The position numbers and the translations under genes were made by a program. From IMG/VR virus record IMGVR_UViG_3300023184_004198, positions 1-64,000 of that record: a stretch of 64,000 nt of DNA. The stretch is one strand, 5' to 3'. This document shows positions 39,515-55,797 of the stretch, one piece after another (the stretch's first letter is position 1; each line of letters opens with the position of its first letter). The notes beneath the pieces are model-generated. The model made no database searches, had not been told where the DNA came from, and was given only the letters and a program-made list of their open reading frames with translations.

Positions 39515-40654
39515 ATGAGCAACTTCTATTGTGCAGCCCCCTGGCGTGGTTTGCACATCAATCCCCGCGGTGATGTTAAAACTTGTTGTGCTGGCAACCC
39601 CAACATGTTGGGCAATCTCAATGGTCAAACAATAGAGCAAATACTCAACTCAGACTTGATGGCTGGTATACGCACCAGTTTGGCACAAGGACAAGCACAC
39701 GACTATTGTTCAAACTGTGTACGTGCAGAACGTTTTGGTGCAGACTCAGAACGTGCCTGGCACAACAATGTAAACCCTGATTTTGATTATAGCACAGCAG
39801 GCAAAGAATATCACTATCCTGTGATAGTGGATGTGCGTTGGAACACCACTTGCAATTTCAGTTGTAACTATTGTGATCCCAGTGCCAGTAGCAAATGGGC
39901 ACAACTAAAACAAGTACCATTCAAGTCAGGTACAAGACCATACTATGAACAAGTGTGTAACTTCTTGGAACAGTATCATGATCACATACATGAAGTTGCC
40001 TTGGTAGGTGGCGAACCATTATTGCTGCCTGAGAACGAACGTCTGTTAGATGTCATTCCAGAGTCTGCTATTGTTACACTGATCACAAACTTGAATGTGG
40101 ACTTGCAGAATAATCGAATATTCCGCAAACTGTCTGAACGCAACAGAGTAGGTTGGAGCATGAGCTTTGATAACATTGGTGAACGATTTGAATACGTGCG
40201 CTATGGCGGATCTTGGACCATGTTGCAAGAAAATTTAAAAGTCATAAAAAGTCTACACCGTGATCGAGGACACTGGGGCGGTGTGCATGCAGTGTACAAC
40301 ATCTACAATGCCACACGATTGTGTGAATTCAGACAATTTGTTGAGGACACCAATAACACAGTGCTGTGGCAAAACTTGTTTCAACCGGAATACCTTGATC
40401 CATTTTTGCATGGAGTGGATGTGGCTCAAGCAGCGGCTGCAGAGATACGTGAGTTATACGGCATGAACATTGCCACACCTGCAGAACGTGTTTTCTTTGA
40501 TCAAGCACTCAGCAAGTATGATTCTATAACTACTGTACAGCCCAAGATTACCGCACAGTTTAAAAGACACATACAAGCAATTGAAACACAATACCATCCC
40601 AGCACAGCAGGCGAGTTTGCAAGACTATGGCCGGAGATTGCACAATGCTTGTGA
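39515..40654 (+). CDS. Radical SAM protein with N-terminal twitch domain (#1)
   Basis: CAAPW...KTCC...CSNC at the N-terminus, then CNFSCNYC and GGEP. Confidence 0.9.
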   Translation: MSNFYCAAPWRGLHINPRGDVKTCCAGNPNMLGNLNGQTIEQILNSDLMAGIRTSLAQGQAHDYCSNCVRAERFGADSERAWHNNVNPDFDYSTAGKEYHYPVIVDVRWNTTCNFSCNYCDPSASSKWAQLKQVPFKSGTRPYYEQVCNFLEQYHDHIHEVALVGGEPLLLPENERLLDVIPESAIVTLITNLNVDLQNNRIFRKLSERNRVGWSMSFDNIGERFEYVRYGGSWTMLQENLKVIKSLHRDRGHWGGVHAVYNIYNATRLCEFRQFVEDTNNTVLWQNLFQPEYLDPFLHGVDVAQAAAAEIRELYGMNIATPAERVFFDQALSKYDSITTVQPKITAQFKRHIQAIETQYHPSTAGEFARLWPEIAQCL

Positions 40655-41184
40655 CACCGGTAGACAACGAAAACAATTTATTCCGTGTAGAGCATGCTGT
40701 GAGTGCAGAACTGGCTGCCAAAGTTGTAGCCACGGACTGGTTGTCGTTGCCTTGGCAACGCCAGGAAGGCCAAGAAAACTGGGCACGTAGACGTATAACA
40801 GACAGTGCTATACCTTGGATTGATCAGTGGCATCAAGAAATCAGCAGTCAATGGTCAACAATAGAACAATCAGTGGGTAGACAGTTGCATCCTTACTTTG
40901 GCACAGCCTGGTGGCTGGATGAACCTGGATTTACATGCAGTATGCACACTGATGGTGAGTTACCGGGCAGTATGCACCTAATTTGGCGTGGTACAGGAAC
41001 TGCATTTTATTGGCATAAAGATCCTGCGACCCTGCGCTATCAAACACCCGAACAGCCCAATGCTGGTTATGTCATGATCAATCAAGCAGACAGCATAGGA
41101 TATAGACGACTGTTGTGGCATGCCATGCTCACACCGTCAGACTCTTATAGAGTAACTTCATACACATGGATACACCCACAATGA
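40645..41184 (+). CDS. 2OG-Fe(II) oxygenase-like protein
   Basis: HxD (SMHTDG) plus a distal His (LWHAM) and YRVT in a double-stranded beta-helix pattern. Confidence 0.6.
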   Translation: MLVTPVDNENNLFRVEHAVSAELAAKVVATDWLSLPWQRQEGQENWARRRITDSAIPWIDQWHQEISSQWSTIEQSVGRQLHPYFGTAWWLDEPGFTCSMHTDGELPGSMHLIWRGTGTAFYWHKDPATLRYQTPEQPNAGYVMINQADSIGYRRLLWHAMLTPSDSYRVTSYTWIHPQ

Positions 41185-42317
41185 TTTCTTCAAGCCCTAC
41201 ATTTTGCCCTGCGCCCTGGACCAGTCTTAACATTGATCAAGCTGGTAGAGTAAGTCCTTGTTTTCACTGTGTTGAAGTGATGGGCAACGTCAAAATAAAC
41301 ACCATACAAGAAGTTATCACAGGCCCAGAATTTGTCAAGATGAAACAATCAATGGCAAGTGGAGAATGGTTTTCTGGCTGCTCATGGTGCAAACGACTAG
41401 AAGAAACCACAGGAGTCAGCGGCAGAACTACACGACGTGCAAGCAAAGAAACCATAGATCAAATAGACTCTGACCCTGAATTTTTCAAATTAGAACATCT
41501 TGTGGTCAACTGGAGCAACTTGTGCAACCTTGCTTGTGTGTATTGCAATCCTGAAACCAGCACAGCATGGCAAAGCATAAAAAAAATTCCCATCAATCAT
41601 GTCAAAAACGAACACGCAGATTTAATTGAACTGGCCCGCACACAAGGGCACAACATTCAAGGGCTGAGCTTGGGTGGTGGCGAGCCGTTGTTGCAAAAAG
41701 GACTAGAACAGTTTTTAAACTACATTGATGCCAGCAAAGTCAGTGTCATGGTCACTACCAATTTGAGCATGGACCTTGAACACAATGCCATTTATCAACG
41801 ATTAAAAACTTGGCCCAATGTAAGTTGGATGATCAGTTTTGACAATGCTGACAAAGACAAATTTGAATATGTGCGGCACGGTGCAAGCTGGGCACAATTT
41901 GTTGACAACATACAAGTCATGAAACGCGATCGACAAAAAATTCAAGCACACCCGGCATATTCAATCTATTGTGCGTTAGATTTGATGGAATATTATGATT
42001 TTTGTGTCGAACAACAGTTAGATATTTTTTGGTGCGAGTTAAATCATCCTATGGAACTGGATATGCGTCGCCAATCTAATAGACTGCGACAACTTGCAGT
42101 GGAAGAAATTGATCGCGTTGTAACCAAATACAAAGATTGTCAGCAATTGGCCACGGATGTATTGCAACGATATCGCATGACTCTCATTGACAACAGTTAT
42201 TTAAACAACAAAAATTTTATACCAAACATTTTAAAATGGCATAAAACTACTGAAGCAACTTTGAACAAAAGTACAAAATTCGTCGACTTATGGCCTTTGT
42301 TGGCTCAACAATTATAG
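41181..42317 (+). CDS. Radical SAM protein with N-terminal twitch domain (#2)
   Basis: CPAPW...PCFHC...CSWC, CNLACVYC and GGGEP. Confidence 0.9.
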   Translation: MISSSPTFCPAPWTSLNIDQAGRVSPCFHCVEVMGNVKINTIQEVITGPEFVKMKQSMASGEWFSGCSWCKRLEETTGVSGRTTRRASKETIDQIDSDPEFFKLEHLVVNWSNLCNLACVYCNPETSTAWQSIKKIPINHVKNEHADLIELARTQGHNIQGLSLGGGEPLLQKGLEQFLNYIDASKVSVMVTTNLSMDLEHNAIYQRLKTWPNVSWMISFDNADKDKFEYVRHGASWAQFVDNIQVMKRDRQKIQAHPAYSIYCALDLMEYYDFCVEQQLDIFWCELNHPMELDMRRQSNRLRQLAVEEIDRVVTKYKDCQQLATDVLQRYRMTLIDNSYLNNKNFIPNILKWHKTTEATLNKSTKFVDLWPLLAQQL

Positions 42318-42324
42318 GAATGAT

Positions 42325-43077
42325 ATGAAAAAGAATAAAACACTATGGCATTTTGGTACAAAATCAGCCGGACAAACATTTCGATGGATGCCCACAGACA
42401 CTGAAGAAAGTTTTCAAAGACTGATACAAAACGAAGAATACCTTGAGTATTTTCGTAACAAAGGCTGGTTGGATCCCGATGCTATAACATATCGTATAAA
42501 CAGTGCTGGATTCAGGTCTGAAGAGTTTGATCCGCAAGCAGCCAGCATGGTTTCACTGGGGTGCAGTTATACCATTGGTATCGGTCTGCCTGAGCAAGCC
42601 ACATGGAGTTATCTAGTATCGCAGGCCTTGGGGTTGAAAAACTATAATTTAGCATGGGGTGGCACCAGTGCAGACACTTGTTTTATGATAGCCGATCATT
42701 GGTTACCAATATTAAAACCAAAGTTGGTGGTAATGACCGCACCTCCCAAACACCGATTTGATTTGATAACAGAAAAAAATCATCACAGTCATGACACCTA
42801 TCTGCCTAGCAGTGAAATTGGTGGAGCAGATCAAGATGGTTTTGTCAAAACTTGGTTTTTGAATGATCGCAATGCTGACTTAAATAATGCACGTAATCGA
42901 TTTGCAGTAGAAGGTCTGTGTGCTAGATTGGGCATACGGTGTTTGACCTATAACGCTCATGATTGGTTTGCCAAAAGTCGAGATGAAGTAGAATATGCCA
43001 GGGATCGCATGCATGCTGGACCTCGAGGACATCAGACATTTGCAGAAAGAATATTACATGATTGCACCACCAAGTAA
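42325..43077 (+). CDS. SGNH/GDSL-like hydrolase or acyltransferase
   Basis: SLGCSYTIG block I, NLAWGGTS and a terminal DRMHAGPRGH (DxxH). Confidence 0.6.
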   Translation: MKKNKTLWHFGTKSAGQTFRWMPTDTEESFQRLIQNEEYLEYFRNKGWLDPDAITYRINSAGFRSEEFDPQAASMVSLGCSYTIGIGLPEQATWSYLVSQALGLKNYNLAWGGTSADTCFMIADHWLPILKPKLVVMTAPPKHRFDLITEKNHHSHDTYLPSSEIGGADQDGFVKTWFLNDRNADLNNARNRFAVEGLCARLGIRCLTYNAHDWFAKSRDEVEYARDRMHAGPRGHQTFAERILHDCTTK

Positions 43078-44647: not shown

Positions 44648-44650
44648 ATA
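44645..44650 (+). promoter_or_regulatory. Late promoter box TAAATA
   Basis: Overlaps the gp17 stop codon, 7 nt before ATG 44658. Confidence 0.6.
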
Positions 44651-44657
44651 CACAACT

Positions 44658-47297
44658 ATGACAATGGAAGCATTACCTCAAGATCTAGCAGATTTCTTGG
44701 TCACACGCAATTTTGACCCAGAATATTTCAACAAAAAAGGCGATCCCTCAGAAGCCAGCGAAGCCACTACCATGAAATTTGACTATGTTGCTGGTTCGGG
44801 CAAAAACTATGGCACAGCAGTATGTGTGATTGCTGATGATGAGCTCAGTTTGTTCTACGGAGACAATCTGGGCCGTGGCATGGAACCCGAAGACAAACAA
44901 GAGTGGTTTGACTTCTTAGAACAACTCAGCAACACTGCTGCCAGCCATGGTGCAACATGGAGTCCTACAGAAATCAACAAACTCAAACACACCTTGGCTG
45001 GTATTGCTGCTATCAAAGAAGGGTTGTTTGAAGGCTACTACGGCAATCGCAAGGTCAGTTACATGGGCGAACAAACTCAAGCTCGCTTGGTAATCAACCA
45101 CAATCGTGTGCTGGGCGAAAACGACAAGCGTTATCGCTATGTGGAAAGCCTGTATATTGAAACAGCAGATCAAGAACGTTTTCGACTGCCATTCAAAAGT
45201 CTAGCAGCCGGCAGAGCCATGCTGGAACATGTACGTCAAGGCGGACGTCCTTACGACATTCGTGGCAATCACATCACAGAGATAGTGAGCGAAATGGCTG
45301 TGCTCAGTCGTTTCAACCGTGCGCAACACCATCGTGTGTACGAAGGTGTCACACAAGAACTTGTGGAAAGCGCACAGCAATACTATCATAACCTACAAGA
45401 AACCATGAAGCATCTTGGCAGCCCACGCGGCTATCGAGCATACTTTGAAAGCTGGGCTCCTGACCAAGTTGGTGAAGCCGAAGCCCTAGTAGAAAATCTA
45501 CGCGACCTGTTTGTAGAACAAACATTGGATGCTAGAATTGAAGCTGCCTTGCCCACACTGGCCAAGATACAAAAACAAGGAAACAACATGAAAGAAGCGC
45601 AAATATTTGAAAACTGGGTCAACCAGTTGAGCGAAGGAACTTGGGCATTGCCAGAAACTCCTGAGCAAATGGAAAAACTCAACCAACTCATGAGTGGCGA
45701 ACTTATTGTTGGTCCAGATGCCACCAATGCCACAGAGCAGTTGTATGACATTGTGGGCGATGATGAACTGTTTGATATTTTGAACGACTTGGCTGACCGT
45801 AGTGAAGGTCGCGCCAATGTTTGGGACGACTCAGATGTACAACGCAGACTGGCTGAACTGGGCATTCAAACCCCTCAGAGCACACAAGCAGAACCTGCTG
45901 ACGTTGAACAAGACACAGCACCCCCAATGATGGAAACTCGCGAAATCCGTAACAAAAAAGGCAGATTACTAGGAACATGGGATGGTCGCGTGTTCACCAT
46001 GGATCCTGAAACAGAACAAATATGGGCTGAAGAAAATGGTCCAGAATGGGTTGAAGATTTTAAAGCCAAAAAAACAGCAGAACTACAACAGCAATCAGCG
46101 CCATCTGAAGACATGATCAAATACTATGCCAACGAATTGGAAAAATATGATGTCCAGGCTGGCCAACCAAGACAGTCTAGACAACAGTATTATGATCTAG
46201 CGGCACAGATGGTATCAGGTGCCCTGGCGGAAGGCGAAGAAGCAGACAACCCCAAGTACAGCATGTCTAACCCAGGAAAACTCAGCAATGACGAATACAA
46301 AGATAGTTTGAATCGTCGATACGGTCAACCTGATTTGGATACTTCAAAGTTCAACAAGTCACATCAAGATTACTATGATCGGAACCCCAGTTTCAAACAA
46401 AGCGGAAAAGAAATTGTCAGTCCTGGTGACGGACGTCTTGCTTCAAAAGTTGTGCCAGCAGTGACTGATACAAACGTAGGTCGTATCCCAATGAACACAC
46501 CCGGTGGTAGTGCCATGCGCGGAGGTGGAGGTATGGGCGGAGGCACAGGACTCGGTGGTAGAAAACCAGGAGATGACTGGAGACTCAATATGCTGAAATT
46601 AGAGAACGCCGACTTGGCCCGCATGTTACAACATGCTGGCGTACCACTGCAAGAAGGTGTGCTGACTGATTCAACAGGCAGCACACTGGAACACATCAAA
46701 GACACATACAAGCGTGACGTCAAAGACTTCATGCAAACTGGCGAAATGAGTCGTCATTTGGAGCAAGTATTGTATGATTATTACTATGACGATATGCCAT
46801 ATGGCGCGAAAACTGGTGAAGACATAGATACATCTGAATGGATCAGTGATCGTTTTGCCGAAGATCTTGGCATGAATGAAAACCTAATCACCCCAATGAT
46901 CATGCCAGTAAGCGAAGGATCATGCAACATGACCATGGAAGGTTCTTACTGCCCAGAACACGGCCTGGCTGAATGTGGTGGCATGTATGAAGATGAGTAC
47001 ATACCACGTGTTGAAATCCGTGGTTTTGGTCCTGATTTTGAAGACCTTCCAGCAGGAAAAAAACTAATCAATCCAATGCAGCCACGTGTCCATAATGCGC
47101 TGTCTCCACTCACACCTGGAGACAGTAGTCCAATGCCTCCAGTGGCCAATGTTGACTTGACAGTGGATGAAGGCAACGATGATCCAATCAATTCAAACTC
47201 CGCCATTACTGGAAGTTATTATGAGGGCAAGGAATACCAATCTCAAGAAGGCGATGCACTTTTGGCAAGAATAAAATCACTGGCTTTGCTCAAATGA
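44658..47297 (+). CDS. Large acidic late protein, probably head-internal and modular
   Basis: 879 aa with a globular N-terminal third, then modules bounded by hydrophobic-x-Glu sites. Ends LLARIKSLALLK. Confidence 0.5.
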   Translation: MTMEALPQDLADFLVTRNFDPEYFNKKGDPSEASEATTMKFDYVAGSGKNYGTAVCVIADDELSLFYGDNLGRGMEPEDKQEWFDFLEQLSNTAASHGATWSPTEINKLKHTLAGIAAIKEGLFEGYYGNRKVSYMGEQTQARLVINHNRVLGENDKRYRYVESLYIETADQERFRLPFKSLAAGRAMLEHVRQGGRPYDIRGNHITEIVSEMAVLSRFNRAQHHRVYEGVTQELVESAQQYYHNLQETMKHLGSPRGYRAYFESWAPDQVGEAEALVENLRDLFVEQTLDARIEAALPTLAKIQKQGNNMKEAQIFENWVNQLSEGTWALPETPEQMEKLNQLMSGELIVGPDATNATEQLYDIVGDDELFDILNDLADRSEGRANVWDDSDVQRRLAELGIQTPQSTQAEPADVEQDTAPPMMETREIRNKKGRLLGTWDGRVFTMDPETEQIWAEENGPEWVEDFKAKKTAELQQQSAPSEDMIKYYANELEKYDVQAGQPRQSRQQYYDLAAQMVSGALAEGEEADNPKYSMSNPGKLSNDEYKDSLNRRYGQPDLDTSKFNKSHQDYYDRNPSFKQSGKEIVSPGDGRLASKVVPAVTDTNVGRIPMNTPGGSAMRGGGGMGGGTGLGGRKPGDDWRLNMLKLENADLARMLQHAGVPLQEGVLTDSTGSTLEHIKDTYKRDVKDFMQTGEMSRHLEQVLYDYYYDDMPYGAKTGEDIDTSEWISDRFAEDLGMNENLITPMIMPVSEGSCNMTMEGSYCPEHGLAECGGMYEDEYIPRVEIRGFGPDFEDLPAGKKLINPMQPRVHNALSPLTPGDSSPMPPVANVDLTVDEGNDDPINSNSAITGSYYEGKEYQSQEGDALLARIKSLALLK

Positions 47298-47337
47298 TAT
47301 AAATACACTTGACACGTAGACAAGAAGCGCATATACT
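47298..47337 (+). promoter_or_regulatory. Tandem late (TATAAATA) and sigma70 (TTGACA-N17-TATACT) promoters for gp32
   Basis: TATAAATA at 47298-47305, TTGACA at 47309-14 and TATACT at 47332-37. Confidence 0.85.
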
Positions 47338-47418: not shown

Positions 47419-47437
47419 TTATCAAGGAGAAAAAACT

Positions 47438-48433
47438 ATGGCATCATTAGCAGAAATCAGAGCAAGACTACAGGCAGCAGAGGGTAACAAAGGTGGGCAA
47501 TCCACCGGTGGAGACAATTCAATTTATCCACATTGGAACATGGAAGAAGGGCAAAGTGCAACACTGCGATTCCTTCCCGATGCAAATATAAAAAACACAT
47601 TTTTCTGGCAAGAACGAGCAATGATTCGTTTACCATTCGCTGGCATCAAAGGCGAAGGTGATTCTAAACAAGTGTACGTGCAAGTACCTTGTGTGGAAAT
47701 GTGGGGCGAAGCATGTCCTATCTTGGCAGAAGTACGCACCTGGTTCAAGGACAAGAGCCTTGAAGAAATGGGTCGCAAATACTGGAAGAAACGTTCATAC
47801 ATTTTCCAAGGATTTGTGCGTGAGAACCCACTGGCCGACGACAAGACACCAGAGAATCCAATCCGACGTTTCATCATCGGACCACAAATCTTTGCCACCA
47901 TCAAAGGTGCGCTGATGGATCCTGAATTGGAAGAAATGCCCACAGACACACTGCGTGGTTTGGACTTCCGTATCACTAAAACCAGCAAGGGTGGCTATGC
48001 TGATTACAGTACAAGCAAGTGGGCACGTAAAGAATCAGCATTAACTGAAGCCGAACAAGCCGCAGTTGCCGCACATGGTGCGTTTGACTTGAGCACATTC
48101 CTGCCTAAGAAGCCAGGCGATGTCGAACTCAAAGTCATCAAAGAGATGTTCGAAGCAAGTGTGGATGGACAGCCTTACGACACAGAGCGTTGGGGTCAAT
48201 ACTTCCGTCCTGCTGGTGTTCAAGCACCCGGCGGTGCCGGAGCCGCACATGCTGACGAGGATACTCCTGCGCCAGCAGCCAAGCCTGTTGCCAAAGCAGC
48301 GCCTGCTCCAGCAGACAATGGGTTTGATGACGACGACACTCCCACAGCAGCCGCACCAGTGGCCAAGCCTGCAGCCAGTGGACAAAATGCCCAGGACATC
48401 CTGGCCATGATTCGTAGCCGTCAAGCCAAGTAA
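47438..48433 (+). CDS. gp32: Single-stranded DNA-binding protein
   Basis: LRFLP...CVEMWGEACP...YWKKRSYIFQGFV...FIIGPQIF...GLDFRITKT...YADYSTSKW, with an acidic Ala/Pro tail. Confidence 0.9.
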   Translation: MASLAEIRARLQAAEGNKGGQSTGGDNSIYPHWNMEEGQSATLRFLPDANIKNTFFWQERAMIRLPFAGIKGEGDSKQVYVQVPCVEMWGEACPILAEVRTWFKDKSLEEMGRKYWKKRSYIFQGFVRENPLADDKTPENPIRRFIIGPQIFATIKGALMDPELEEMPTDTLRGLDFRITKTSKGGYADYSTSKWARKESALTEAEQAAVAAHGAFDLSTFLPKKPGDVELKVIKEMFEASVDGQPYDTERWGQYFRPAGVQAPGGAGAAHADEDTPAPAAKPVAKAAPAPADNGFDDDDTPTAAAPVAKPAASGQNAQDILAMIRSRQAK

Positions 48434-49053
48434 TGCGAACGGCTCTGGACACAGAGCTGTTTCCAAAACTGTGTGAAGTGGTAGAAATGCCACTTCACAA
48501 TCAATGGGTTTATCTGATTCAGAAGAATGGAAACAGTAGTTTGCGGATTCAGCAGTCAAGAGACAATCTTGCTGTGTTCACCAATGACGAAATAAGTGCT
48601 CTTGATTATGTAGATGTGTATATCCGTAATCCCAGAGCCAGGTATGTCAGTGGCATCAACACTTACTTGCAACATCTTCAACGCGACCACCCTGAGTTAG
48701 ATTACAACACCGCATTTTGGTTTGCCCGACGTTATAAATTTTTAAACACACACTACTTGCCGCAATTTCATTGGTTGGCAAATCTCAGCCAGTATTTGCG
48801 CACAGATACAAAAATACGTTTTAGAGATTTTAAAAATTTCAGTCTGATTGTCAATATAAATCATGACGCATACATAACAAAACCAACACAGGTTTTTGTT
48901 GAAAAATTATTTCAAGATGACAAGTCAATCGAACTTTGGTTGTTCTTGGATCAAATTTTGTTGGATCTAGCAGGCCAAGAAATGACCTGGACACAATTGT
49001 TAGATCATTACCAACGTTACCACCCTGATATTATAAAATATGTATTGCCCTAG
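48433..49053 (+). CDS. Sulfotransferase family 2-like protein
   Basis: IQKNGNSSL (5'-PSB-like loop), YIRNPRARYVSG (3'-PB-like) and HYLPQ. Confidence 0.55.
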   Translation: MRTALDTELFPKLCEVVEMPLHNQWVYLIQKNGNSSLRIQQSRDNLAVFTNDEISALDYVDVYIRNPRARYVSGINTYLQHLQRDHPELDYNTAFWFARRYKFLNTHYLPQFHWLANLSQYLRTDTKIRFRDFKNFSLIVNINHDAYITKPTQVFVEKLFQDDKSIELWLFLDQILLDLAGQEMTWTQLLDHYQRYHPDIIKYVLP

Positions 49054-50017
49054 ACTAGATCATTTTGTTCGTTTTAATTTTGATGGATCAGTTGGTCGTT
49101 GTGGTCATATGACCGCAGCACCGCAGTTTGAAACACTGCAACAAATGGATTCCAGCGATTGGCTTGCAAAGATTCGTACTTCAATGAGCCAAGATGTTTG
49201 GCCGGAAGAATGTGTTCGTTGCAAAGAAGTTGAAATCATTGGTAATAAAAGTGTTAGACAACAATCATTGGATAGACATGCACCGCTGTTGGATGTTAGA
49301 TCCGATTATCTTGTGCTGGGCGGCGTACTAGACAATGTGTGCAACAGTGCATGCCAAACTTGCAATGAAACACTCAGCACCAAGATAGGTAGTTTGCATT
49401 CAAAAGAATACACCAAAATCAACAACACCGCGTTGATTGACACATTGCCAGTGGAACGCATTGTGCAAATGGACATCAACGGTGGTGAGCCTAGTACCAG
49501 TCCTAACTATTTAAAACTGTTGGAAAATTTACCGCCCAACGTCAAACATGTACGAGTCAATACCAATGGCAGCAGATTAATCACAGTGCTGCCTAAATTA
49601 ATTGAACGTGGCATCAAAGTCACTGTGACCGTGAGCCTGGATGGCATTGATCGTAGACACGATTATGTAAGGTGGCCCATCAAATGGCAGGATGTTGAAC
49701 AAAACATTCAAGCATATCAAACCATGGGCTTGCATGAATTAAATACCTGGACCACAGTGAGCGCATTAAACATTGGTGATTTGAAGAACATTTTTTCTTA
49801 TGTACAACAGAACAATTTAAAAAATTCTTGGGCATTGTTAGAAAATCCTTCTGTGCTGAGTGTAAAGTACAGCAATCATTTAACAAGGCAAGCAGATGTG
49901 CCAGACGAACTAAAATCCGTTGTAGCACAAGGACCAGACAACACTGTGGAATTACAGTTGTGGACCACAGCACAAGATCAGTTGCGTGGCATCAAACTCT
50001 GGGATTATTTTCAATGA
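49040..50017 (+). CDS. Radical SAM protein with N-terminal twitch domain (#3)
   Basis: CPRL...GRCGH...CVRC, CNSACQTC, NGGEP and RVNTNGS. Confidence 0.9.
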   Translation: MYCPRLDHFVRFNFDGSVGRCGHMTAAPQFETLQQMDSSDWLAKIRTSMSQDVWPEECVRCKEVEIIGNKSVRQQSLDRHAPLLDVRSDYLVLGGVLDNVCNSACQTCNETLSTKIGSLHSKEYTKINNTALIDTLPVERIVQMDINGGEPSTSPNYLKLLENLPPNVKHVRVNTNGSRLITVLPKLIERGIKVTVTVSLDGIDRRHDYVRWPIKWQDVEQNIQAYQTMGLHELNTWTTVSALNIGDLKNIFSYVQQNNLKNSWALLENPSVLSVKYSNHLTRQADVPDELKSVVAQGPDNTVELQLWTTAQDQLRGIKLWDYFQ

Positions 50018-50589
50018 AAATAGCCATCACAGGTCATACCGCAGGTATAGGTCAGGCATTTGCAAAAATTCTTTCAGGCCGTGGACATGAAATCATAGGC
50101 CTAAGCAAACGACATGGCGACAACATTAGAAACACTGTTAAAATTTTAGAAAAAATAACACCCTGTGACATGTTCATAAACAATGCACAGGCCGGATATG
50201 CTCAGACTGAATTGTTGTATGCTGTGTGGCAAGCCTGGCAAGATCAACCAGGCAAATACATATGGTGCATTGGCACAATGATGACACAGTCACCAGTGGA
50301 TCAGGCCGTACCAGGATACAGCGACCTAGTAATGAGTCAATATCGAAATCAAAAAATTGCATTGGATGATGCAATAACCCAACTGCGCAACAAAAAACAC
50401 ATGCCAGTTATTACCATGATCAGACCAGGTGCAATAGCCACACAACCTGACCAACTGTCTGAATGGCCTTATTGTGATGTTGATACATGGGCCGATACAG
50501 TGGTGTCAACCATGGTGCTGGCCAACAAACAAGGCATGCGATACAATGAACTGGCATTGTGTGCTGCCAAGAACTCAATGCCTTTGTAA
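50014..50589 (+). CDS. Short-chain dehydrogenase/reductase-like protein
   Basis: MKIAITGHTAGIGQAF Rossmann motif, FINNA, YxxxK (YRNQK) and MIRPG. Confidence 0.8.
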   Translation: MKIAITGHTAGIGQAFAKILSGRGHEIIGLSKRHGDNIRNTVKILEKITPCDMFINNAQAGYAQTELLYAVWQAWQDQPGKYIWCIGTMMTQSPVDQAVPGYSDLVMSQYRNQKIALDDAITQLRNKKHMPVITMIRPGAIATQPDQLSEWPYCDVDTWADTVVSTMVLANKQGMRYNELALCAAKNSMPL

Positions 50590-51746
50590 TGGATGCCAAA
50601 CAAATATTAACCAACCGTGCATTTTGTCCTGTGCCGTGGACTGGCATCATGTACAACTTTGACGGCACAGTTAAAAACTGTATTCGCAGTGCTGAACCCA
50701 TTGGCAACATCAACAACAATACCATTGAAGAAATTCTAAGAGATGATTATCTAATCAAATCAGACATGCATGCTGGGATAAAATTTGGTCGCTGTGATCC
50801 TTGCTACAATTTAGAACAAGATAAAAACAATTTCAATATCATAAGTGACAGAGTGTTTTATCTCAAAGAATTGCGCGATGTAGACAATACTTTGTATGAT
50901 ACCGCCAACCATGCTTTGCACACTGTGGACATACGCTGGAGCAATCTATGTAATTTTGCCTGTGTGTACTGCAATCCAGAATTCAGTAGCAAATGGGCCA
51001 GCGAGCGCAACATAGTCATACACACTCCAGAGGACCAAAAACGTGAAGCATTCAAACAATACATTTTTGATCGTGCTGGGCAACTCAAACATGTGTATCT
51101 AGCCGGTGGTGAACCGCTGTTGATGAAAGAGAATTTGGAATTTTTAGAACTGTTAAAAAAGGTCAATCCAAAGATCAATCTCAGAGTCAACACCAATCTC
51201 AGCAAAGTAGACACACGCATATTTGATTTGATCTGCGAATTTAAAAATGTGCATTGGATTGTGAGCATAGAGGCTTTGGAAGCAGAATACGAATACATAC
51301 GGCATGGCGGGGCATGGCAAGATTTTGTGGATAACTTGCAAGTTATCAAACACCTGAATCACAAAATATCATTCAACATGTTACACTTTTTGTTAAACCA
51401 TTTCAGTATTTTTGATTGTGTGGATTACCTATCTGGACAAGGATTTCACAACAACAGTTTTATAATTGGGCCAGTGACCGGACCGGCATACCTAAATATT
51501 AGACATCTGCCGGACAATGTGTTAAACTCAGTGAAGAAGATGCTGTCAGATCGTGTTGCTCAACAACCAGGTTATTTGTTGGAAAACGGTTACAAAAACA
51601 TGTTGACACATCTAGATCAGCCGTTTGAAAAAGATCTAGCAGGGTCCTTTGAAAAAATAGCCGACATGGATCAACGGCGTAAATTAGACAGCAGAGCAAT
51701 TTTTAAAGATTTATACAAGGAAGAAAATCATGGGAAAACCATTTGA
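50589..51746 (+). CDS. Radical SAM protein with N-terminal twitch domain (#4)
   Basis: CPVPW...KNC...CDPC, CNFACVYC and AGGEP. Confidence 0.9.
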   Translation: MDAKQILTNRAFCPVPWTGIMYNFDGTVKNCIRSAEPIGNINNNTIEEILRDDYLIKSDMHAGIKFGRCDPCYNLEQDKNNFNIISDRVFYLKELRDVDNTLYDTANHALHTVDIRWSNLCNFACVYCNPEFSSKWASERNIVIHTPEDQKREAFKQYIFDRAGQLKHVYLAGGEPLLMKENLEFLELLKKVNPKINLRVNTNLSKVDTRIFDLICEFKNVHWIVSIEALEAEYEYIRHGGAWQDFVDNLQVIKHLNHKISFNMLHFLLNHFSIFDCVDYLSGQGFHNNSFIIGPVTGPAYLNIRHLPDNVLNSVKKMLSDRVAQQPGYLLENGYKNMLTHLDQPFEKDLAGSFEKIADMDQRRKLDSRAIFKDLYKEENHGKTI

Positions 51747-52785
51747 CGTAAGCAAGTTCCGTAAGGAAATTACCAAAAGCATTGACGGACTGTCAATTGG
51801 CTTTAACGATCCCACAGACTGGATCTCAACAGGCAATTATGCACTAAACTATTTGATCTCAGGCGATTTCAATCGCGGCATTCCCCTAGGCAAGGTCACG
51901 GTGTTTGCTGGCGATTCTGGCGCAGGCAAATCATACATTTGTTCAGGCAATATCATCAAGAATGCACAAGAGCAAGGTATTTTTGTTGTGCTGATTGATA
52001 GTGAGAACGCCTTGGACGAAGATTGGCTCAAAGCTTTGGGTGTGGACACAAGCGAAAGCAAACTGTTGAAACTTTCAATGGCCATGATTGATGACGTGGC
52101 CAAGACCATATCAACATTCATGAGCGACTACAAAGCATTACCCGAAGGCGAACGTCCCAAGGTCATGTTTGTGATTGACAGCTTGGGCATGTTGTTGACT
52201 CCCACAGACGTAAACCAGTTTGATGCAGGCGAAATGAAGGGTGACCTTGGTCGTAAACCCAAAGCTCTCACTGCCTTGGTGCGTAACTGTGTGAACATGT
52301 TTGGTTCATACAATGTAGGTTTGGTTTGTACCAATCACACATACGCAAGTCAGGACATGTTTGACCCCGATGATAAAATCAGTGGTGGACAAGGCTTTAT
52401 CTACGCCAGTTCAATTGTTGTGGCCATGAAGAAGATGAAGCTCAAAGAGGACGAAGACGGCAACAAAGTGTCAGATGTCAACGGTATTCGTGCAGGCTGT
52501 AAGGTTATGAAAACACGCTATGCCAAGCCTTTTGAAGGTGTGCAGGTCAAGATTCCTTACACCACAGGTATGAGTCCTTACTCAGGCTTGGTGGACTTGA
52601 TTGAAAAGAAAGAATTGCTCAAGCGTGAAGGCAACAGCCTGGTGTTTACCACGTCAGATGGCGAGATCATCAAGAAGTTCCGCAAAGCCTGGGAAAAGAA
52701 CGATGATGGTTGCTTGGACAAAGTCATGGCAGACTTCAAGAACATCAAGTCAGAGGTAAGTACGTCTGACGCTGTTGAAGAATAA
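51730..52785 (+). CDS. uvsX: RecA/UvsX-like recombinase
   Basis: WISTGNYALNYLISG, GDSGAGKS Walker A, IDSENALD, VIDSLG and SGGQGFIYASS. Confidence 0.95.
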   Translation: MGKPFDVSKFRKEITKSIDGLSIGFNDPTDWISTGNYALNYLISGDFNRGIPLGKVTVFAGDSGAGKSYICSGNIIKNAQEQGIFVVLIDSENALDEDWLKALGVDTSESKLLKLSMAMIDDVAKTISTFMSDYKALPEGERPKVMFVIDSLGMLLTPTDVNQFDAGEMKGDLGRKPKALTALVRNCVNMFGSYNVGLVCTNHTYASQDMFDPDDKISGGQGFIYASSIVVAMKKMKLKEDEDGNKVSDVNGIRAGCKVMKTRYAKPFEGVQVKIPYTTGMSPYSGLVDLIEKKELLKREGNSLVFTTSDGEIIKKFRKAWEKNDDGCLDKVMADFKNIKSEVSTSDAVEE

Positions 52786-52792
52786 ACACAAA

Positions 52793-53491
52793 ATGAATAA
52801 AACCGTACAAGTAACTGATGCCAATCCTGTGGTTGAAATACGTTCAAAATATCCCAAACTTTATGTCATGTGGGTAATTGGTATACGGTGTAATTTTGCT
52901 TGTAGTTATTGCCCCGATGTTTGGCATGATAAACACAGCCCACATAAAACGTTGGATGAATTAAAAGATGCTTGGCGCAAACTTGTACAACAGGCACAAA
53001 ATAATTCTAAGAGATTGTCTGTGAGTATTCTTGGTGGTGAACCCACACTGAATCCAAATTTGTTATCTTTTTTGCAATGGGTAAAAGTATACTATCGTCA
53101 ACATAATGTTGAAGTAGCAGTTTATTCCAATGGCACTGCTTCACTTGATGATTACAAAAAATTAAGCAAATATTGTAATTTTAATTTTTCCACTCATAGT
53201 GAATTTATGAACGAATCTAAGTTTTTTTCCACTGTAACAAGTTTGTCTCAATATGTTAAAGAACAGAATATAAATTGTCATGTAAATGTGTTGGTCATGG
53301 ATGAAGAGTGGAACAAAGACCGAACAGTAGAATACATTGCATATCTCAAAGAAAATAATATAAATTATCAAGTATCTCCAGTTGAGCCAGTGTGGCAACC
53401 GGGAACAAATTGGCCCGAACAAAATATAAAGTCCAGTGCCGGGACAAAAAAAACAAACAAGGTAAATTTTTATGACCGTATTTCTAACTGA
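52793..53491 (+). CDS. Radical SAM protein (#5), core domain only
   Basis: CNFACSYC, LGGEPTLNP, YSNG and FSTHSE. No auxiliary cluster domain in this ORF. Confidence 0.85.
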   Translation: MNKTVQVTDANPVVEIRSKYPKLYVMWVIGIRCNFACSYCPDVWHDKHSPHKTLDELKDAWRKLVQQAQNNSKRLSVSILGGEPTLNPNLLSFLQWVKVYYRQHNVEVAVYSNGTASLDDYKKLSKYCNFNFSTHSEFMNESKFFSTVTSLSQYVKEQNINCHVNVLVMDEEWNKDRTVEYIAYLKENNINYQVSPVEPVWQPGTNWPEQNIKSSAGTKKTNKVNFYDRISN

Positions 53492-53792
53492 ATCACCAAA
53501 CAGTGATTGTACAGCGATTCTAGCAGATGGCACTGAAATTGATATCGAATCTTGGGACTTATGGCGCAATAATATTGCTTATTTTCAAGGTTGGAATTGT
53601 GCAGCCGGCATGGATAGTATAGTAGTTGAAAGTGATTTTCAAGTTTGGTCAGGAGTTTGTAGAAATAATAATCTAGGAAATTTAATGGATGAAAATTTTT
53701 CATTACTAAAGGAACCAACTGTATGTGTAAAAAATCAGTGTACTACTTGTATTGCTGATTTAATCAACGATAAAAAAATGTCAAAGGAATAA
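53472..53792 (+). CDS. Cys-rich SPASM/twitch-like stand-alone protein
   Basis: FQGWNCAAG...SGVCRNNNLGNL...VCVKNQCTTCIAD; overlaps the 3' end of radical SAM #5. Confidence 0.6.
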   Translation: MTVFLTESPNSDCTAILADGTEIDIESWDLWRNNIAYFQGWNCAAGMDSIVVESDFQVWSGVCRNNNLGNLMDENFSLLKEPTVCVKNQCTTCIADLINDKKMSKE

Positions 53793-53793
53793 A

Positions 53794-54057
53794 ATGTCAA
53801 CAGAAGTAGCAAGCGAAATTTGGGGCGAATTAAAACGATACGTTAATGTAGTAGATCGTATAGATGCTGCTGAGAGCATAGTGTCTATCTTGATTGATCA
53901 TGACTACGACGTAGAAGAAATTCGTGATGCCTTTAAAGGAGATTCAGACATTAAAAAAGCCTTGACTGCGTACTTAGACCATGACAAAGATTACGCAGAA
54001 GAAGAGGAAGAAGAGTTTGATGATGAAGACAACTACAATCAAGAAGATGATTACTGA
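53794..54057 (+). CDS. Small acidic hypothetical protein
   Basis: 87 aa with a Glu/Asp-rich C-terminus and SD AAGGA. Confidence 0.65.
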   Translation: MSTEVASEIWGELKRYVNVVDRIDAAESIVSILIDHDYDVEEIRDAFKGDSDIKKALTAYLDHDKDYAEEEEEEFDDEDNYNQEDDY

Positions 54058-55235
54058 TGTCTGCAGACAGAGATTACTATTGCTCTTATAAATTTAAATA
54101 TTTAAAGATTGATTTGGTATCCAATGCCACATATAACTGTCATGCGGCAAAGCAGCATAACATTGACTTCCAATGGTTATCTAAGAACAAAGGAAATTTA
54201 TTCAATACTGATATTAATGTTTCAGAAAGAAACATGATGTTGGTTAATCAACGAAATCGTAGTTGTGAAGAAATTTGTTGGCCACTAGAAGATCAAGGAG
54301 CCATAAGTCCTCGATTGTGGCAAAATGGACAGATCAAAACACATACCAAAGTCCACACACAACCCGAAATATTAGAAATAAAACTAAATGACAATTGCAA
54401 CTTGTCTTGCTCTTATTGTTGTAAAGAATACAGCAGTGCTTGGCGAAGAGACTTGTTTAACAATGGTCAATACAATGTTGACGTCAATGAAAGATACAAA
54501 CTCACGGACCGTGACAAATTGATGTTTAAAATAAGTCAGAATGAAGTTAAAAACACTGATCGTTTTCAACAGTTGTTGTATGAAATAAAAAACTTCAGCA
54601 AAAAACTTGAAGAAATAGTTATAACAGGTGGTGAGCCATTGCTTGACAATCAACTGTTTGACATAATAGAAGCAGTGTCAGACGGTTCAGCAAAAATTAA
54701 CATATACACCGGCATGGGAGTGGATTATAAAAGATTTACAAGAATGTTAGATCGAATTAAACAAGTACCCAATGCCATGATATCGGTCAGTGCAGAATGT
54801 ACAGATAAATTTTATGAGTTCAATAGGTTTGGTAGTCAGTGGCATGATTTTTTAGAAAAAATAAAAGTATTGATTGATTCGCAGATTGAATTTAGATTCA
54901 GCACATGCATTACCAATTTAACAGTGATTGATTTGGCATCTTTTATAAGACAATTTGCCAATTGCCGTATAGGTTTGGTTTTTGCACATCAGCCCGGCAT
55001 GATGGCTCCATATGTATTGGACCCAAGTACCAAACAACAGATCATACAAGACATTCAATCGTTGCCTGATCATTATCGGACTCAGATTACACAGTCCATA
55101 CAGGCCGATCCCAGTGAAACACAACGGCAACAAATGTCAGAATTTTTAAAAGAATATGCTGCTCGTAGACATCTTGACCTGAGCATTTACCCATCAAGTT
55201 TTTTAGAATGGTTGGATATCCATGTGGTACAGTAA
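54057..55235 (+). CDS. Radical SAM protein with N-terminal twitch-like domain (#6)
   Basis: YCSYKF...NCHAA...CEEIC, CNLSCSYC and TGGEP. Confidence 0.9.
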   Translation: MSADRDYYCSYKFKYLKIDLVSNATYNCHAAKQHNIDFQWLSKNKGNLFNTDINVSERNMMLVNQRNRSCEEICWPLEDQGAISPRLWQNGQIKTHTKVHTQPEILEIKLNDNCNLSCSYCCKEYSSAWRRDLFNNGQYNVDVNERYKLTDRDKLMFKISQNEVKNTDRFQQLLYEIKNFSKKLEEIVITGGEPLLDNQLFDIIEAVSDGSAKINIYTGMGVDYKRFTRMLDRIKQVPNAMISVSAECTDKFYEFNRFGSQWHDFLEKIKVLIDSQIEFRFSTCITNLTVIDLASFIRQFANCRIGLVFAHQPGMMAPYVLDPSTKQQIIQDIQSLPDHYRTQITQSIQADPSETQRQQMSEFLKEYAARRHLDLSIYPSSFLEWLDIHVVQ

Positions 55236-55792: not shown

Positions 55793-55797
55793 TTCAC

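What the first reader, a model, noticed from the sequence alone, without database searches (positions are those of the whole stretch)
39515..55235. Six radical SAM paralogs, five with an inverted (N-terminal) twitch domain
Seen: CxxxCxxC and GGEP motifs in ORFs at 39515, 41181, 49040, 50589, 52793 and 54057. Five carry a Cys-rich block N-terminal to the SAM motif. Established: this architecture matches NCBIfam N_Twi_rSAM (NF033640, recalled as function unknown and mostly from uncultured samples). Characterised twitch enzymes include the sugar/aminocyclitol modifiers BtrN and NeoN. Inference: the neighbours (SDR, sulfotransferase-like, SGNH, 2OG oxygenase) point to radical sugar tailoring, giving a testable function for an orphan family and suggesting that many of its 'bacterial' members are phage genes.
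Basis: partly seen in the sequence, partly recalled or inferred. Interest (0 to 1): 0.85.

Follow-up and report, generated by a model that had tools for sequence, protein, structure and literature searches.

The report
Phage radical SAM enzymes, N-terminal twitch
An uncultured T4-like giant phage carries six radical SAM enzyme genes; five belong to an uncharacterised, mostly viral family whose iron-sulfur 'twitch' domain sits at the front, and two of them lie in a conserved cassette with a sulfotransferase and a reductase that most likely tailors a sugar.

Summary
Exactly six ORFs in the window carry CxxxCxxC plus GGEP, and all lie in 39515-55235. Five match NCBIfam NF033640 (N_Twi_rSAM): A, B and D score above the curated cutoff, C and F below it. 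All five keep a four-Cys block that aligns to the C-terminal twitch domain of BtrN. The sixth (E) is a core-only radical SAM followed by a separate Cys-rich ORF (E2).

The window is the first 64 kb of a 212-kb T4-like phage contig.

New here: C and D belong to a conserved cassette, sulfotransferase-family protein, rSAM C, SDR, rSAM D. It sits between gp32 and UvsX in at least 55 of 59 related phages. A, B, E and F are variable accessories.

The family is very large (4,207 clusters at 50% identity) and mostly viral. The only hit in GTDB representative genomes is a phage contig binned into a 'Legionellales' MAG. True bacterial clusters also exist.

Sugar or nucleotide-sugar tailoring is the best-supported function, from the partner genes and from other loci. 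It is unproven; protein and DNA substrates remain rivals. No paper on this family was found in the searched library.

The parts
39515..40654 (+). rSAM A: N-terminal-twitch radical SAM (379 aa). Variable accessory gene.
   Evidence: NF033640 207.7 bits (cutoff 170). Pfam SPASM at residues 6-68 and Radical_SAM at 111-248. Orthologues are present in only some relatives and form their own clade.
40627..41184 (+). g185: putative 2OG-Fe(II) oxygenase, P4H-like.
   Evidence: No Pfam, NCBIfam or PHROG hit. Atlas feature neighbours carry PF13640, and there is a structure neighbour at TM 0.70. An HxD motif (MHTDGE) is visible in the sequence.
41166..42317 (+). rSAM B: N-terminal-twitch radical SAM. The start may instead be 41181, which gives an ATGA overlap with g185.
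   Evidence: NF033640 195.7 bits. SPASM at residues 14-75. Rare among relatives.
42325..43077 (+). SGNH/GDSL-like hydrolase (weak assignment).
   Evidence: Lipase_GDSL_2 at E 0.0025, below cutoff; the orthologue in L035 scores E 4.8e-5. GCSYT and DRMH motifs are visible in the sequence.
47438..48433 (+). gp32-like ssDNA-binding protein. Core gene that anchors the cassette upstream.
   Evidence: phrog_1192 at E 2e-67. Synteny.
48433..49053 (+). g206: sulfotransferase-family protein, first gene of the conserved cassette.
   Evidence: AF2 model pLDDT 90. BFVD 'Sulfotransferase family' at E 8.8e-15, TM 0.83. The top five PDB Foldseek hits are heparan sulfate sulfotransferases, but not significant at E 0.2-0.6. 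Sulfotransfer_2 is a weak hit in 5 of 19 orthologues. Atlas neighbours. Conserved K31-N-G-S-S-S, R65-x7-S73 and H107.
49040..50017 (+). rSAM C: N-terminal-twitch radical SAM (325 aa, short C-terminus), second cassette gene.
   Evidence: NF033640 140.2 bits, E 9e-41, below cutoff. Cys 3, 21, 58, 61 lie ahead of CNSACQTC. Its orthologous clade has 100% support.
50014..50589 (+). Short classical SDR (about 191 aa), third cassette gene.
   Evidence: TGxxxGIG, NNAQ and YxxxK are invariant across 21 orthologues. The profile hits classical SDRs in the PDB, best E 4e-7.
50589..51746 (+). rSAM D: N-terminal-twitch radical SAM (385 aa), fourth cassette gene.
   Evidence: NF033640 248.1 bits. AF2 pLDDT 91. 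Orthologues at 48-91% identity across IMG/VR and metagenomes.
51730..52785 (+). UvsX-like recombinase. Core gene that anchors the cassette downstream.
   Evidence: phrog_97 at E 2e-67.
52793..53491 (+). rSAM E: core-only radical SAM (232 aa). Rare accessory gene.
   Evidence: Radical_SAM 39.9 bits. Only the core matches NF033640, at 36.5 bits. An orthologue was seen only in L004.
53472..53792 (+). E2: separate 106-aa Cys-rich (twitch/SPASM-like) protein that overlaps the end of E by 20 nt.
   Evidence: Matches positions 200-256 of the STM4011 rSAM model at E 1.7e-5, far below cutoff. In-frame stops lie upstream of its ATG. The same two-ORF layout occurs in L004 at 70% identity.
54057..55235 (+). 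rSAM F: N-terminal-twitch radical SAM (392 aa). Variable accessory gene.
   Evidence: NF033640 161.6 bits, below cutoff. Cys 9, 28, 70, 74. Present or absent among relatives.
55222..55674 (+). UvsY-like recombination mediator. Last gene of the tightly packed gp32-to-UvsY block.
   Evidence: phrog_231 at E 5e-13.
55762..56562 (+). Cytidylyltransferase-like domain fused to a PMI-type cupin. Candidate supplier of the nucleotide-activated substrate.
   Evidence: PF01467 at 4e-15 and PF01050 at 2e-20. rfaE domain II and GMP_PMI hits are below cutoff. PDB cytidylyltransferases. Conserved after UvsY in most relatives.
56559..57242 (+). GT8-family glycosyltransferase, first gene of a glycosyltransferase and methyltransferase island that runs to about 63384.
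   Evidence: PF01501 at E 6e-6. GT25, two FkbM, Methyltransf_23 and GT2 lie downstream.

Best explanation
The six genes are radical SAM enzymes of an uncultured T4-like jumbo phage. Five belong to the uncharacterised N_Twi_rSAM family, in which the auxiliary-cluster 'twitch' domain lies N-terminal to the SAM-cleaving barrel.

Shown: each has a CX3CX2C site for the SAM-cleaving [4Fe-4S] cluster, a GGEP SAM-binding motif, and four conserved N-terminal cysteines homologous to the BtrN twitch.

Inferred: the four cysteines fully ligate a second [4Fe-4S] cluster, which acts as an electron sink or conduit as in BtrN and anSME, not as a substrate-binding iron as in MoaA.

Two of the five (C and D) form a clade-wide cassette with a PAPS-type sulfotransferase-family protein and a short classical SDR. 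The cassette is co-linear and translationally coupled inside the gp32-UvsX-UvsY block.

Most likely working model (inferred). The cassette tailors a nucleotide-activated sugar or polyol, or a glycan. This may be made by the conserved cytidylyltransferase-cupin protein just downstream and passed to the adjacent glycosyltransferases and methyltransferases. The 5'-deoxyadenosyl radical abstracts a C-H hydrogen from the sugar. The radical is then either oxidised to a ketone or dehydrated. The SDR reduces the ketone, giving net epimerisation or deoxygenation, as in the BtrN and AprD4/AprD3 pairs recalled from the literature. The sulfotransferase adds sulfate. A, B, E/E2 and F would be interchangeable accessory tailoring steps that vary between related phages.
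For: Family and architecture. The family profile aligns positions 5-74 to BtrN twitch residues 186-260 at E 5.9e-6.

Phage identity: gp23 capsid, sheath, tube, TerL, gp32, UvsX and UvsY. The window is positions 1-64000 of IMGVR_UViG_3300023184_004198.

Cassette conservation: g206-C-(u181)-SDR-D in at least 55 of 59 distinct D orthologues. It is also kept together in L080 away from gp32 and UvsX. Each paralogue forms its own supported clade.

Partner identities: sulfotransferase; SDR.

Links to sugar chemistry:
- The cytidylyltransferase-cupin, GT8, GT25, FkbM methyltransferases and GT2 lie downstream in the window.
- In L134, an SDR, an N_Twi rSAM, a GT1 glycosyltransferase, an NDP-sugar 4,6-dehydratase/epimerase (PF01370, E 1e-53) and another N_Twi rSAM are contiguous.
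- In L119, a run of family members ends in a NodU/CmcH-type carbamoyltransferase.
- In L084, an rSAM gene sits between a methyltransferase and GT25.
- A second, unrelated Sulfotransfer_2 gene lies next to an A-type member in L142.
- The bacterial cluster L081 starts with a PF00483 sugar-1-phosphate nucleotidylyltransferase, followed by about 10 rSAM genes (four N_Twi modules), an SGNH-like gene and AsnB.
Against: - No experiment, and no characterised close homologue.
- The closest solved proteins to the catalytic core by sequence profile are RiPP or protein maturases: TvgB (8vpo), SkfB, YydG/EpeE and anSME. Foldseek gives only generic rSAM cores at TM about 0.4. BtrN matches through its twitch only.
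- The cassette lies in a replication and recombination gene block, not inside the glycosyltransferase island. Other family members sit beside DNA polymerase, ferritin and nucleases.
- TPR fusions, P4H-like 2OG oxygenase neighbours and an Asp/Arg hydroxylase neighbour would fit protein substrates.
- The sulfotransferase, SGNH and 2OG assignments rest on remote or structural similarity.
- The model coordinates could not be inspected, so cluster geometry and the substrate pocket are untested.
Confidence: 0.45

Rival explanations
1. The enzymes modify proteins or peptides, for example virion structural proteins or a RiPP-like product. Possible reactions are epimerisation, cross-linking or oxidation of side chains. 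The 2OG oxygenases would act as hydroxylases and the sulfotransferase would act on a protein or peptide.
For: The nearest solved relatives of the core by profile are RiPP or protein maturases: TvgB (8vpo) at E 1e-12, SkfB, YydG/EpeE, and anSME. Homologues are fused to TPR repeats. g185 resembles prolyl-hydroxylase-type PF13640 proteins and the YhhC peptide oxygenase. There is an Asp/Arg hydroxylase neighbour in L140. Runs of many paralogues in a row (8 in 13.4 kb in L143) resemble multi-rSAM RiPP clusters.
Against: No RRE or PqqD-like domain was found, and no small precursor-like ORF lies in the overlapping cassette. The constant partners are a classical SDR and a sulfotransferase-family protein whose nearest PDB folds are carbohydrate sulfotransferases. 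Glycosyltransferase, NDP-sugar dehydratase, carbamoyltransferase and nucleotidylyltransferase genes are direct neighbours elsewhere. The set of solved SPASM/twitch structures is biased towards RiPP enzymes.
Confidence: 0.2
2. The cassette modifies DNA, nucleotides or a nucleotide-derived cofactor, such as a hypermodified base or sugar in phage DNA. It would be expressed with the replication and recombination genes.
For: The cassette is packed between gp32 and UvsX with overlapping start and stop codons. The only clear upstream signals lie before gp32. Other members lie next to DNA polymerase B, primase and helicase. A nuclease gene precedes rSAM A (Endonuclease_NS here, SNase in L096). There are weak core similarities to MoaA, QueE and viperin, which act on nucleotides.
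Against: These similarities are the generic rSAM core. No base-modifying partner (hydroxymethylase, DpdA-like transglycosylase, DNA kinase) is seen in the window or in the related loci examined. T4-like genomes commonly carry unrelated auxiliary genes between core genes, and the papers read place radical SAM cassettes in variable regions (PMC7029224). The promoter matches are not above chance.
Confidence: 0.12
3. The enzymes tailor some other small molecule that is not a glycan building block, such as a lipid, a cofactor or an antibiotic-like metabolite. Alternatively they are loosely connected auxiliary metabolic genes without a single shared pathway.
For: Contexts are heterogeneous: ferritin, fatty-acid desaturase, alpha/beta hydrolase, glutamine synthetase, GTP cyclohydrolase I and IMPDH are neighbours in other phages. 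The variable paralogues come and go independently.
Against: The four-gene cassette is strictly co-linear and conserved, which argues for one pathway. Carbohydrate-type partners recur in independent contexts.
Confidence: 0.15

Closest known systems
NCBIfam NF033640 N_Twi_rSAM ('twitch domain-containing radical SAM protein')
   Same: Full-length matches covering the N-terminal twitch, the core and the C-terminal helices. A, B and D score above the curated cutoff.
   Different: C and F fall below the cutoff. The family has no assigned function, and the text searches found no paper on it.
BtrN (2-deoxy-scyllo-inosamine dehydrogenase, PDB 4M7T), the archetypal twitch radical SAM
   Same: The N-terminal block of the family aligns to BtrN's twitch domain at E 5.9e-6. 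The Cys layout C-x18-C ... C-x2-C matches what I recall for BtrN's fully Cys-ligated auxiliary cluster (from memory, not checked here).
   Different: The domain order is inverted: the twitch comes before the barrel, not after it. The catalytic cores are not specifically related, and BtrN is absent from the top 50 Foldseek hits. These proteins are longer and have a C-terminal helical extension.
SPASM/twitch peptide and protein maturases (TvgB 8VPO, SkfB, YydG/EpeE, anSME)
   Same: Best sequence-profile and Foldseek matches to the catalytic core.
   Different: There is no C-terminal SPASM domain, no RRE and no precursor peptide gene. Identity is only about 15-19%, with TM about 0.4.
AprD4/AprD3 and similar radical SAM plus NAD(P)H reductase pairs in aminoglycoside sugar deoxygenation (recalled from the literature, not tested)
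   Same: A radical SAM enzyme paired with a reductase-type partner encoded next to it. This is the logic proposed here for C/D plus the SDR.
   Different: No sequence comparison was made. The analogy is mechanistic only.
Radical SAM cassettes noted in marine T4-like environmental phage genomes (PMC5332604: 12 rSAM genes in one 183-kb T4-like genome; PMC7029224: rSAM cassettes in pelagimyophage host-recognition clusters)
   Same: Uncultured aquatic T4-like phages with multiple radical SAM genes, often close to glycosyltransferases.
   Different: In the passages read, neither paper mentions the N-terminal twitch family, the conserved sulfotransferase-rSAM-SDR-rSAM cassette, or a function for these genes.

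Membership tests
Radical SAM superfamily (PF04055) | CX3CX2C cluster motif and a Pfam score above the gathering threshold. | tested here: met
   All six score 35.2-63.6 bits against 29.5. All six have CX3CX2C and GGEP.
N_Twi_rSAM (NF033640) | Whole-protein HMM score at or above the curated cutoff of 170 bits. | tested here: met
   A 207.7, B 195.7, D 248.1 bits.
N_Twi_rSAM (NF033640) | The same cutoff, applied to C and F. | tested here: not met
   C 140.2 and F 161.6 bits. NF033640 is still by far the best family for both (E 9e-41 and 3e-47), with near full-length alignments. They group with the family in my own profile and tree. They are best described as divergent relatives.
N_Twi_rSAM (NF033640) | A twitch-type four-Cys domain N-terminal to the SAM motif. 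| tested here: met
   The Cys pattern is present in all five window proteins and in 52 of 52 sampled members. SPASM Pfam hits lie at the N-terminus of A, B and D. The block is homologous to the BtrN twitch.
Twitch radical SAM enzymes (BtrN type) | The auxiliary [4Fe-4S] cluster is actually bound by the twitch cysteines. | not testable with these tools
   This needs Fe/S analysis, EPR or a structure with clusters.
Sugar-modifying radical SAM enzymes (BtrN, NeoN, AprD4, DesII, BlsE) | Activity on a carbohydrate or aminocyclitol substrate. | not testable with these tools
   There is only context evidence. BlsE and DesII appear among generic Foldseek core hits.
STM4011 family radical SAM (NF038073), for E plus E2 | HMM score at or above 200 bits in a single polypeptide. 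| tested here: not met
   E scores 25.8 bits on model positions 11-146. E2 scores 24.2 bits on positions 200-256. They are two separate ORFs.
Sulfotransferase fold (PF03567-like), for g206 | PAPS-binding 5'-PSB and 3'-PB motifs, a catalytic base, and fold similarity. | tested here: met
   K-N-G-S-S-S, R-x7-S and an invariant His (the motif definitions are from memory). BFVD 'Sulfotransferase family' at TM 0.83, E 9e-15. The Pfam hit itself is only weak, best E 0.0085 in 5 of 19 orthologues. PAPS use is untested.
Classical SDR, for the 50014-50589 product | TGxxxGxG cofactor motif, NNAG-like motif and a YxxxK catalytic pair. | tested here: met
   Invariant across 21 orthologues. The profile hits classical SDRs in the PDB. 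The single-sequence Pfam hit is only at or below cutoff.

The most novel reading that the evidence does not exclude
N-terminal-twitch radical SAM enzymes are a largely phage-borne, rapidly diversifying toolkit for radical C-H chemistry on sugars. With a dedicated sulfotransferase and SDR they would build an unusual sulfated, deoxy or epimerised sugar that aquatic T4-like phages attach to their virions or to the infected cell surface. Paralogue gain and loss would tune host range or exclusion of competing phages. This would give a first function to a family of more than 4,000 sequence clusters and would be a new kind of viral glycan biosynthesis.
Probability: 0.3. Interest if true: 0.75.

Novelty: new member of a known kind. 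Interest (0 to 1): 0.6.

Why it matters
The family is catalogued in NCBIfam but has no function, and I found no paper on it in the searched library. It is also very large and appears to live mainly in uncultured aquatic phages. Two results make it experimentally approachable. First, two members sit in a strictly conserved four-gene cassette with a sulfotransferase and an SDR. Second, a nucleotidylyltransferase is encoded next door. Four or five small genes could be expressed together and screened against a short list of nucleotide-activated substrates. The analysis also shows that at least one 'bacterial' genome-database entry for this family is a binned phage contig, which matters for anyone inferring its taxonomic range. 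The inverted domain order is of interest to radical SAM enzymologists because it asks how an N-terminal twitch reaches the active site.

Tried and rejected
- Near-identity DNA search of 39-56 kb against 50,697 cultured phage records: no match. tblastn of D found one weak hit, Ralstonia phage RsoM2USA at 24.5% identity, so no cultured relative carries a close homologue.
- Genome-contig scans. D alone found nothing. A three-sequence alignment found one locus. These scans use strict motifs, so they do not show that the family is absent from bacteria.
- g206 against PDB sequences by profile: only chance-level hits. PDB Foldseek hits were all E > 0.2. The assignment became firm only with BFVD.
- E/E2 as a programmed frameshift at the conserved A8 run: rejected. 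The E2 frame has stops at 53427 and 53463 upstream of its ATG. A sequencing error is also rejected, because L004 has the same layout.
- T4 late-promoter (TATAAATA) and sigma-70 scans: counts are not above shuffled expectation. Only the pair upstream of gp32 is noted.
- Literature searches for N_Twi_rSAM, NF033640, 'N-terminal twitch', twitch plus bacteriophage, and rSAM plus sulfotransferase plus SDR plus phage: nothing specific.
- The idea that the window is a pelagimyophage: not supported. The best cultured TerL relatives are PA5oct-like jumbo phages at 51% identity.
There is no expression evidence or environment metadata.
- The coordinates of the predicted models were not available to scripts, so Cys-cluster geometry and pockets were not measured.

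Full report
**Observation**

The + strand between 39515 and 55235 carries six ORFs with both CxxxCxxC and GGEP. No other ORF in the 64-kb window has both. I call them:
- A, 39515-40654
- B, 41166/41181-42317
- C, 49040-50017
- D, 50589-51746
- E, 52793-53491
- F, 54057-55235

All six pass the Pfam Radical_SAM threshold. For five of them the best NCBIfam model by a wide margin is NF033640 N_Twi_rSAM. D (248.1), A (207.7) and B (195.7 bits) exceed the curated cutoff of 170. F (161.6) and C (140.2) fall short, but they align nearly full length at E 3e-47 and 9e-41.

Pfam SPASM hits lie at residues 6-75 of A, B and D, ahead of the SAM motif. Each of the five has four cysteines, C-x17-19-C ... C-x2-3-C, upstream of CX3CX2C. 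All 52 diverse family members I aligned have the same pattern. A profile of those 52 aligns its positions 5-74 to residues 186-260 of BtrN, which is BtrN's C-terminal twitch domain, at E 5.9e-6. 'Inverted twitch' is therefore a tested statement of homology, not just a Cys count.

The paralogues share only 17-32% identity.

**The sixth gene**

E is a 232-aa core without an N-terminal block. A 106-aa Cys-rich ORF, E2 (53472-53792), overlaps its end by 20 nt in another frame. E2 weakly matches the C-terminal part of the STM4011 radical SAM model.

The E2 frame has stops at 53427 and 53463 before its ATG, so the two ORFs cannot be joined by slippage at the nearby A8 run. A relative, L004, has the same two-ORF layout at 67-70% identity. 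I read this as a radical SAM core with its twitch-like partner encoded separately.

**What the window is**

The window encodes a gp23-type major capsid protein, tail sheath and tube, a large terminase, gp32, UvsX and UvsY. The best cultured terminase match is the PA5oct-like jumbo phages at 51% identity. It equals positions 1-64000 of IMGVR_UViG_3300023184_004198, a 212,614-bp contig (also the 212,614-bp contig).

No cultured phage has near-identical DNA. Only one weak tblastn hit to D exists among 50,697 phage records.

**The six genes are not one block**

I fetched 139 related IMG/VR loci and compared gene order.

Between gp32 and UvsX, nearly every relative has the same run:
- g206 (48433-49053)
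- rSAM C
- a short SDR (50014-50589)
- rSAM D

Of 59 distinct D orthologues with enough upstream sequence, 33 show exactly this order. Another 21 show it with one extra ~181-aa gene between C and the SDR. That extra protein has an HxD...H pattern but no Pfam hit.

The four genes also stay together in L080, where gp32 and UvsX are not nearby. Identities fall to about 28-35% for g206, 46-57% for C, 44-58% for the SDR and 48-62% for D, and the order still holds.

A, B, E/E2 and F are present in some relatives and absent in others. In a tree of 102 dereplicated family members from these loci, A, B, C, D and F each form a separate supported clade. The paralogues are therefore old, and C and D are distinct, co-inherited functions.

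From gp32 to UvsY (47438-55674) the genes abut or overlap. The only notable upstream signals are a TATAAATA box and an 11/12 sigma-70-like site just before gp32. Neither scan exceeds chance overall.

**Partner genes**

*SDR.* It has invariant TGxxxGIG, NNAQ and YxxxK motifs across 21 orthologues. Its profile hits classical SDRs in the PDB.

*g206.* It has no significant Pfam, NCBIfam or PDB sequence hit. Several weaker lines agree:
- Its AF2 model is confident, pLDDT 90.
- The top five PDB Foldseek hits are heparan sulfate sulfotransferases, but not significant.
- Five of 19 orthologues give weak Sulfotransfer_2 hits.
- Half of its Atlas neighbours carry PF03567.
- In BFVD it matches a phage 'Sulfotransferase family' model at E 8.8e-15, TM 0.83, followed by other viral sulfotransferases.

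Conserved K-N-G-S-S-S, R-x7-S and an invariant His fit the PAPS-binding loops and catalytic base as I recall them.

*g185* (40627-41184). It is 2OG-Fe(II)-oxygenase-like only by Atlas features and structure. The neighbours are of the prolyl-hydroxylase-like PF13640 type.

*The 42325-43077 product.* It is SGNH-like on weak evidence.

*Downstream of UvsY.* Most relatives keep a cytidylyltransferase-like domain fused to a PMI-type cupin. In the window it is followed by GT8, two unknown genes, Methyltransf_23, GT25, two FkbM methyltransferases, a putative glycosyltransferase and GT2. A TPR-GT9 protein lies next to the capsid gene.

**The wider family**

A profile of the five paralogues finds 4,207 clusters (50% identity) at E <= 1e-30. 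Many are tandem double or triple fusions, and some are fused to TPR repeats. D alone has more than 3,000 homologues in metagenomes, on contigs up to 223 kb.

The Atlas clusters nearest to D are 93-100% viral.

In 185,579 GTDB representative genomes, a motif-restricted scan found a single locus. It is a 'Legionellales bacterium SP228' MAG contig that in fact carries TerL, gp32, the full cassette, UvsX and UvsY. This is a binned phage contig.

Real bacterial loci also exist:
- L081 has a Crp regulator and ScdA flanking a PF00483 nucleotidylyltransferase, about ten radical SAM genes (four N_Twi modules, some B12-binding), an SGNH-like gene and AsnB.
- L141 has RpoD, a histidine kinase and a TPR-fused double N_Twi protein. 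A polysaccharide cluster starts about 3.4 kb downstream of it.

Other phage contexts:
- ferritin, N_Twi, then an alpha/beta hydrolase, near DNA polymerase B
- eight N_Twi genes in 13.4 kb (L143)
- SDR, N_Twi, GT1 glycosyltransferase, NDP-sugar 4,6-dehydratase/epimerase, N_Twi, all contiguous (L134)
- a run of family members ending in a carbamoyltransferase (L119)
- a second, unrelated Sulfotransfer_2 gene next to an A-type member (L142)

**Mechanism**

Shown: the motifs for a SAM-cleaving cluster, and a four-Cys twitch homologous to BtrN's.

Inferred:
- The twitch binds a fully Cys-ligated auxiliary [4Fe-4S] cluster that handles electrons and does not bind substrate.
- The enzymes abstract a hydrogen from an unactivated C-H bond.
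- In the cassette the product is a ketone or a dehydrated intermediate, which the SDR reduces and the sulfotransferase decorates.
- The substrate is a nucleotide-activated sugar or polyol, or a glycan.

The last point rests on the recurring carbohydrate-type neighbours listed above. I give the whole model 0.45.

**Rivals**

A protein or peptide substrate (0.2):
- The closest solved cores by sequence are RiPP or protein maturases: TvgB, SkfB, YydG/EpeE and anSME.
- TPR fusions and P4H-like oxygenases fit this reading.
- Against it, there is no RRE or precursor gene, and the constant partners look like small-molecule enzymes.

A DNA or nucleotide substrate (0.12):
- It is suggested by the position among replication and recombination genes and by nuclease neighbours.
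- Against it, no base-modifying partner is seen.

A non-glycan small molecule, or unconnected auxiliary genes (0.15), cannot be excluded.

Foldseek of the D model (pLDDT 91) gave only generic radical SAM cores at TM about 0.4. No solved structure represents this family.

**Comparison with what is known**

The genes are members (A, B, D) or divergent relatives (C, F) of NF033640, a catalogued but uncharacterised family. I found no paper naming it. Two papers note multiple radical SAM genes, or radical SAM cassettes, in marine T4-like environmental phage genomes. In the passages I read they give no further analysis of these genes (PMC5332604; PMC7029224).

**Verdict**

The genes are new members of a known, orphan kind. 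Interest is moderate to high, because the conserved cassette makes the family's function directly testable.

Noticed in passing
window 53472-53792 (and 52793-53491); L004 5925-6927: Radical SAM E has its Cys-rich twitch/SPASM-like part on a separate ORF that overlaps it by 20 nt. The layout is conserved in a relative at 67-70% identity. An A8 run (53448-53455) just upstream is also conserved, but in-frame stops mean it cannot join the frames. The role of the A8 run is unexplained.
   Followed up: partly
L086 (PBLX01000007.1, 'MAG: Legionellales bacterium isolate SP228'): This contig of a bacterial MAG in GTDB carries TerL, gp32, the full sulfotransferase-rSAM-SDR-rSAM cassette, UvsX and UvsY. 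It is a T4-like phage contig binned into a bacterial genome.
   Followed up: yes
L081-L083 (GCA_027401895.1, contig DAHZHQ010000006.1): A bacterial locus with a sugar-1-phosphate nucleotidylyltransferase followed by about ten consecutive radical SAM genes. Four are N-terminal-twitch modules, one is a TPR-linked double, and two or three are B12-binding. An SGNH-like gene and asparagine synthase follow. The organism was not identified.
   Followed up: partly
L143 (SRR5675707 contig, 13.4 kb); L119; L134: Extreme paralogue runs occur: eight N-terminal-twitch radical SAM genes in 13.4 kb (L143). Another run ends in a carbamoyltransferase (L119). In L134 family members are interleaved with a GT1 glycosyltransferase and an NDP-sugar 4,6-dehydratase.
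   Followed up: partly
L104-L118, and the contig of P0145: In another group of phages, a ferritin-like gene (144 aa) sits directly next to an A-like N-terminal-twitch radical SAM near DNA polymerase B, often with an alpha/beta hydrolase. This could be an iron supply for Fe-S enzymes. The earlier paper PMC5332604 noted Fe-S carrier genes in rSAM-rich T4-like phages.
   Followed up: no
window 38693-39499: A DNA/RNA non-specific endonuclease (PF01223, E 1e-37) with an N-terminal signal-peptide-like sequence lies directly upstream of rSAM A. In L096 a staphylococcal-nuclease-like gene lies directly upstream of the rSAM A orthologue.
   Followed up: no
window 1317-2465 (- strand): A TPR-repeat protein with a GT9 (heptosyltransferase-like) C-terminal part is encoded right next to the gp23 major capsid gene (57-1253). 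Together with the RfaE-domain-II-like cytidylyltransferase, this hints at heptose-type or protein-directed glycosylation.
   Followed up: no
window 32770-36222: A 1150-aa ORF lies in a stretch with unusually strong AT skew (about 0.30 over 32-36 kb). Its only hits are to a ~60-aa domain of several PHROGs of unknown function (residues about 601-670).
   Followed up: no
L023 1411-1956 and 20 other loci: In about a third of related phages, the cassette has a fifth gene (~181 aa) between rSAM C and the SDR. It has an HxD...H pattern suggestive of a small 2OG/Fe oxygenase but no Pfam hit. It is absent from the window.
   Followed up: partly
window 47298-47337: A T4 late-promoter-like TATAAATA box and an 11/12 sigma-70-like promoter sit together in the only sizeable intergenic gap before the tightly packed gp32-to-UvsY block. 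Neither motif count is above chance for the region.
   Followed up: partly
window 44658-47297: An 879-aa ORF after the terminase has a Gly-rich low-complexity stretch and an acidic region. It gives only a weak 'virion structural protein' PHROG hit (E 4e-8). I labelled it 'portal' in my scripts for convenience, but that is not established.
   Followed up: no
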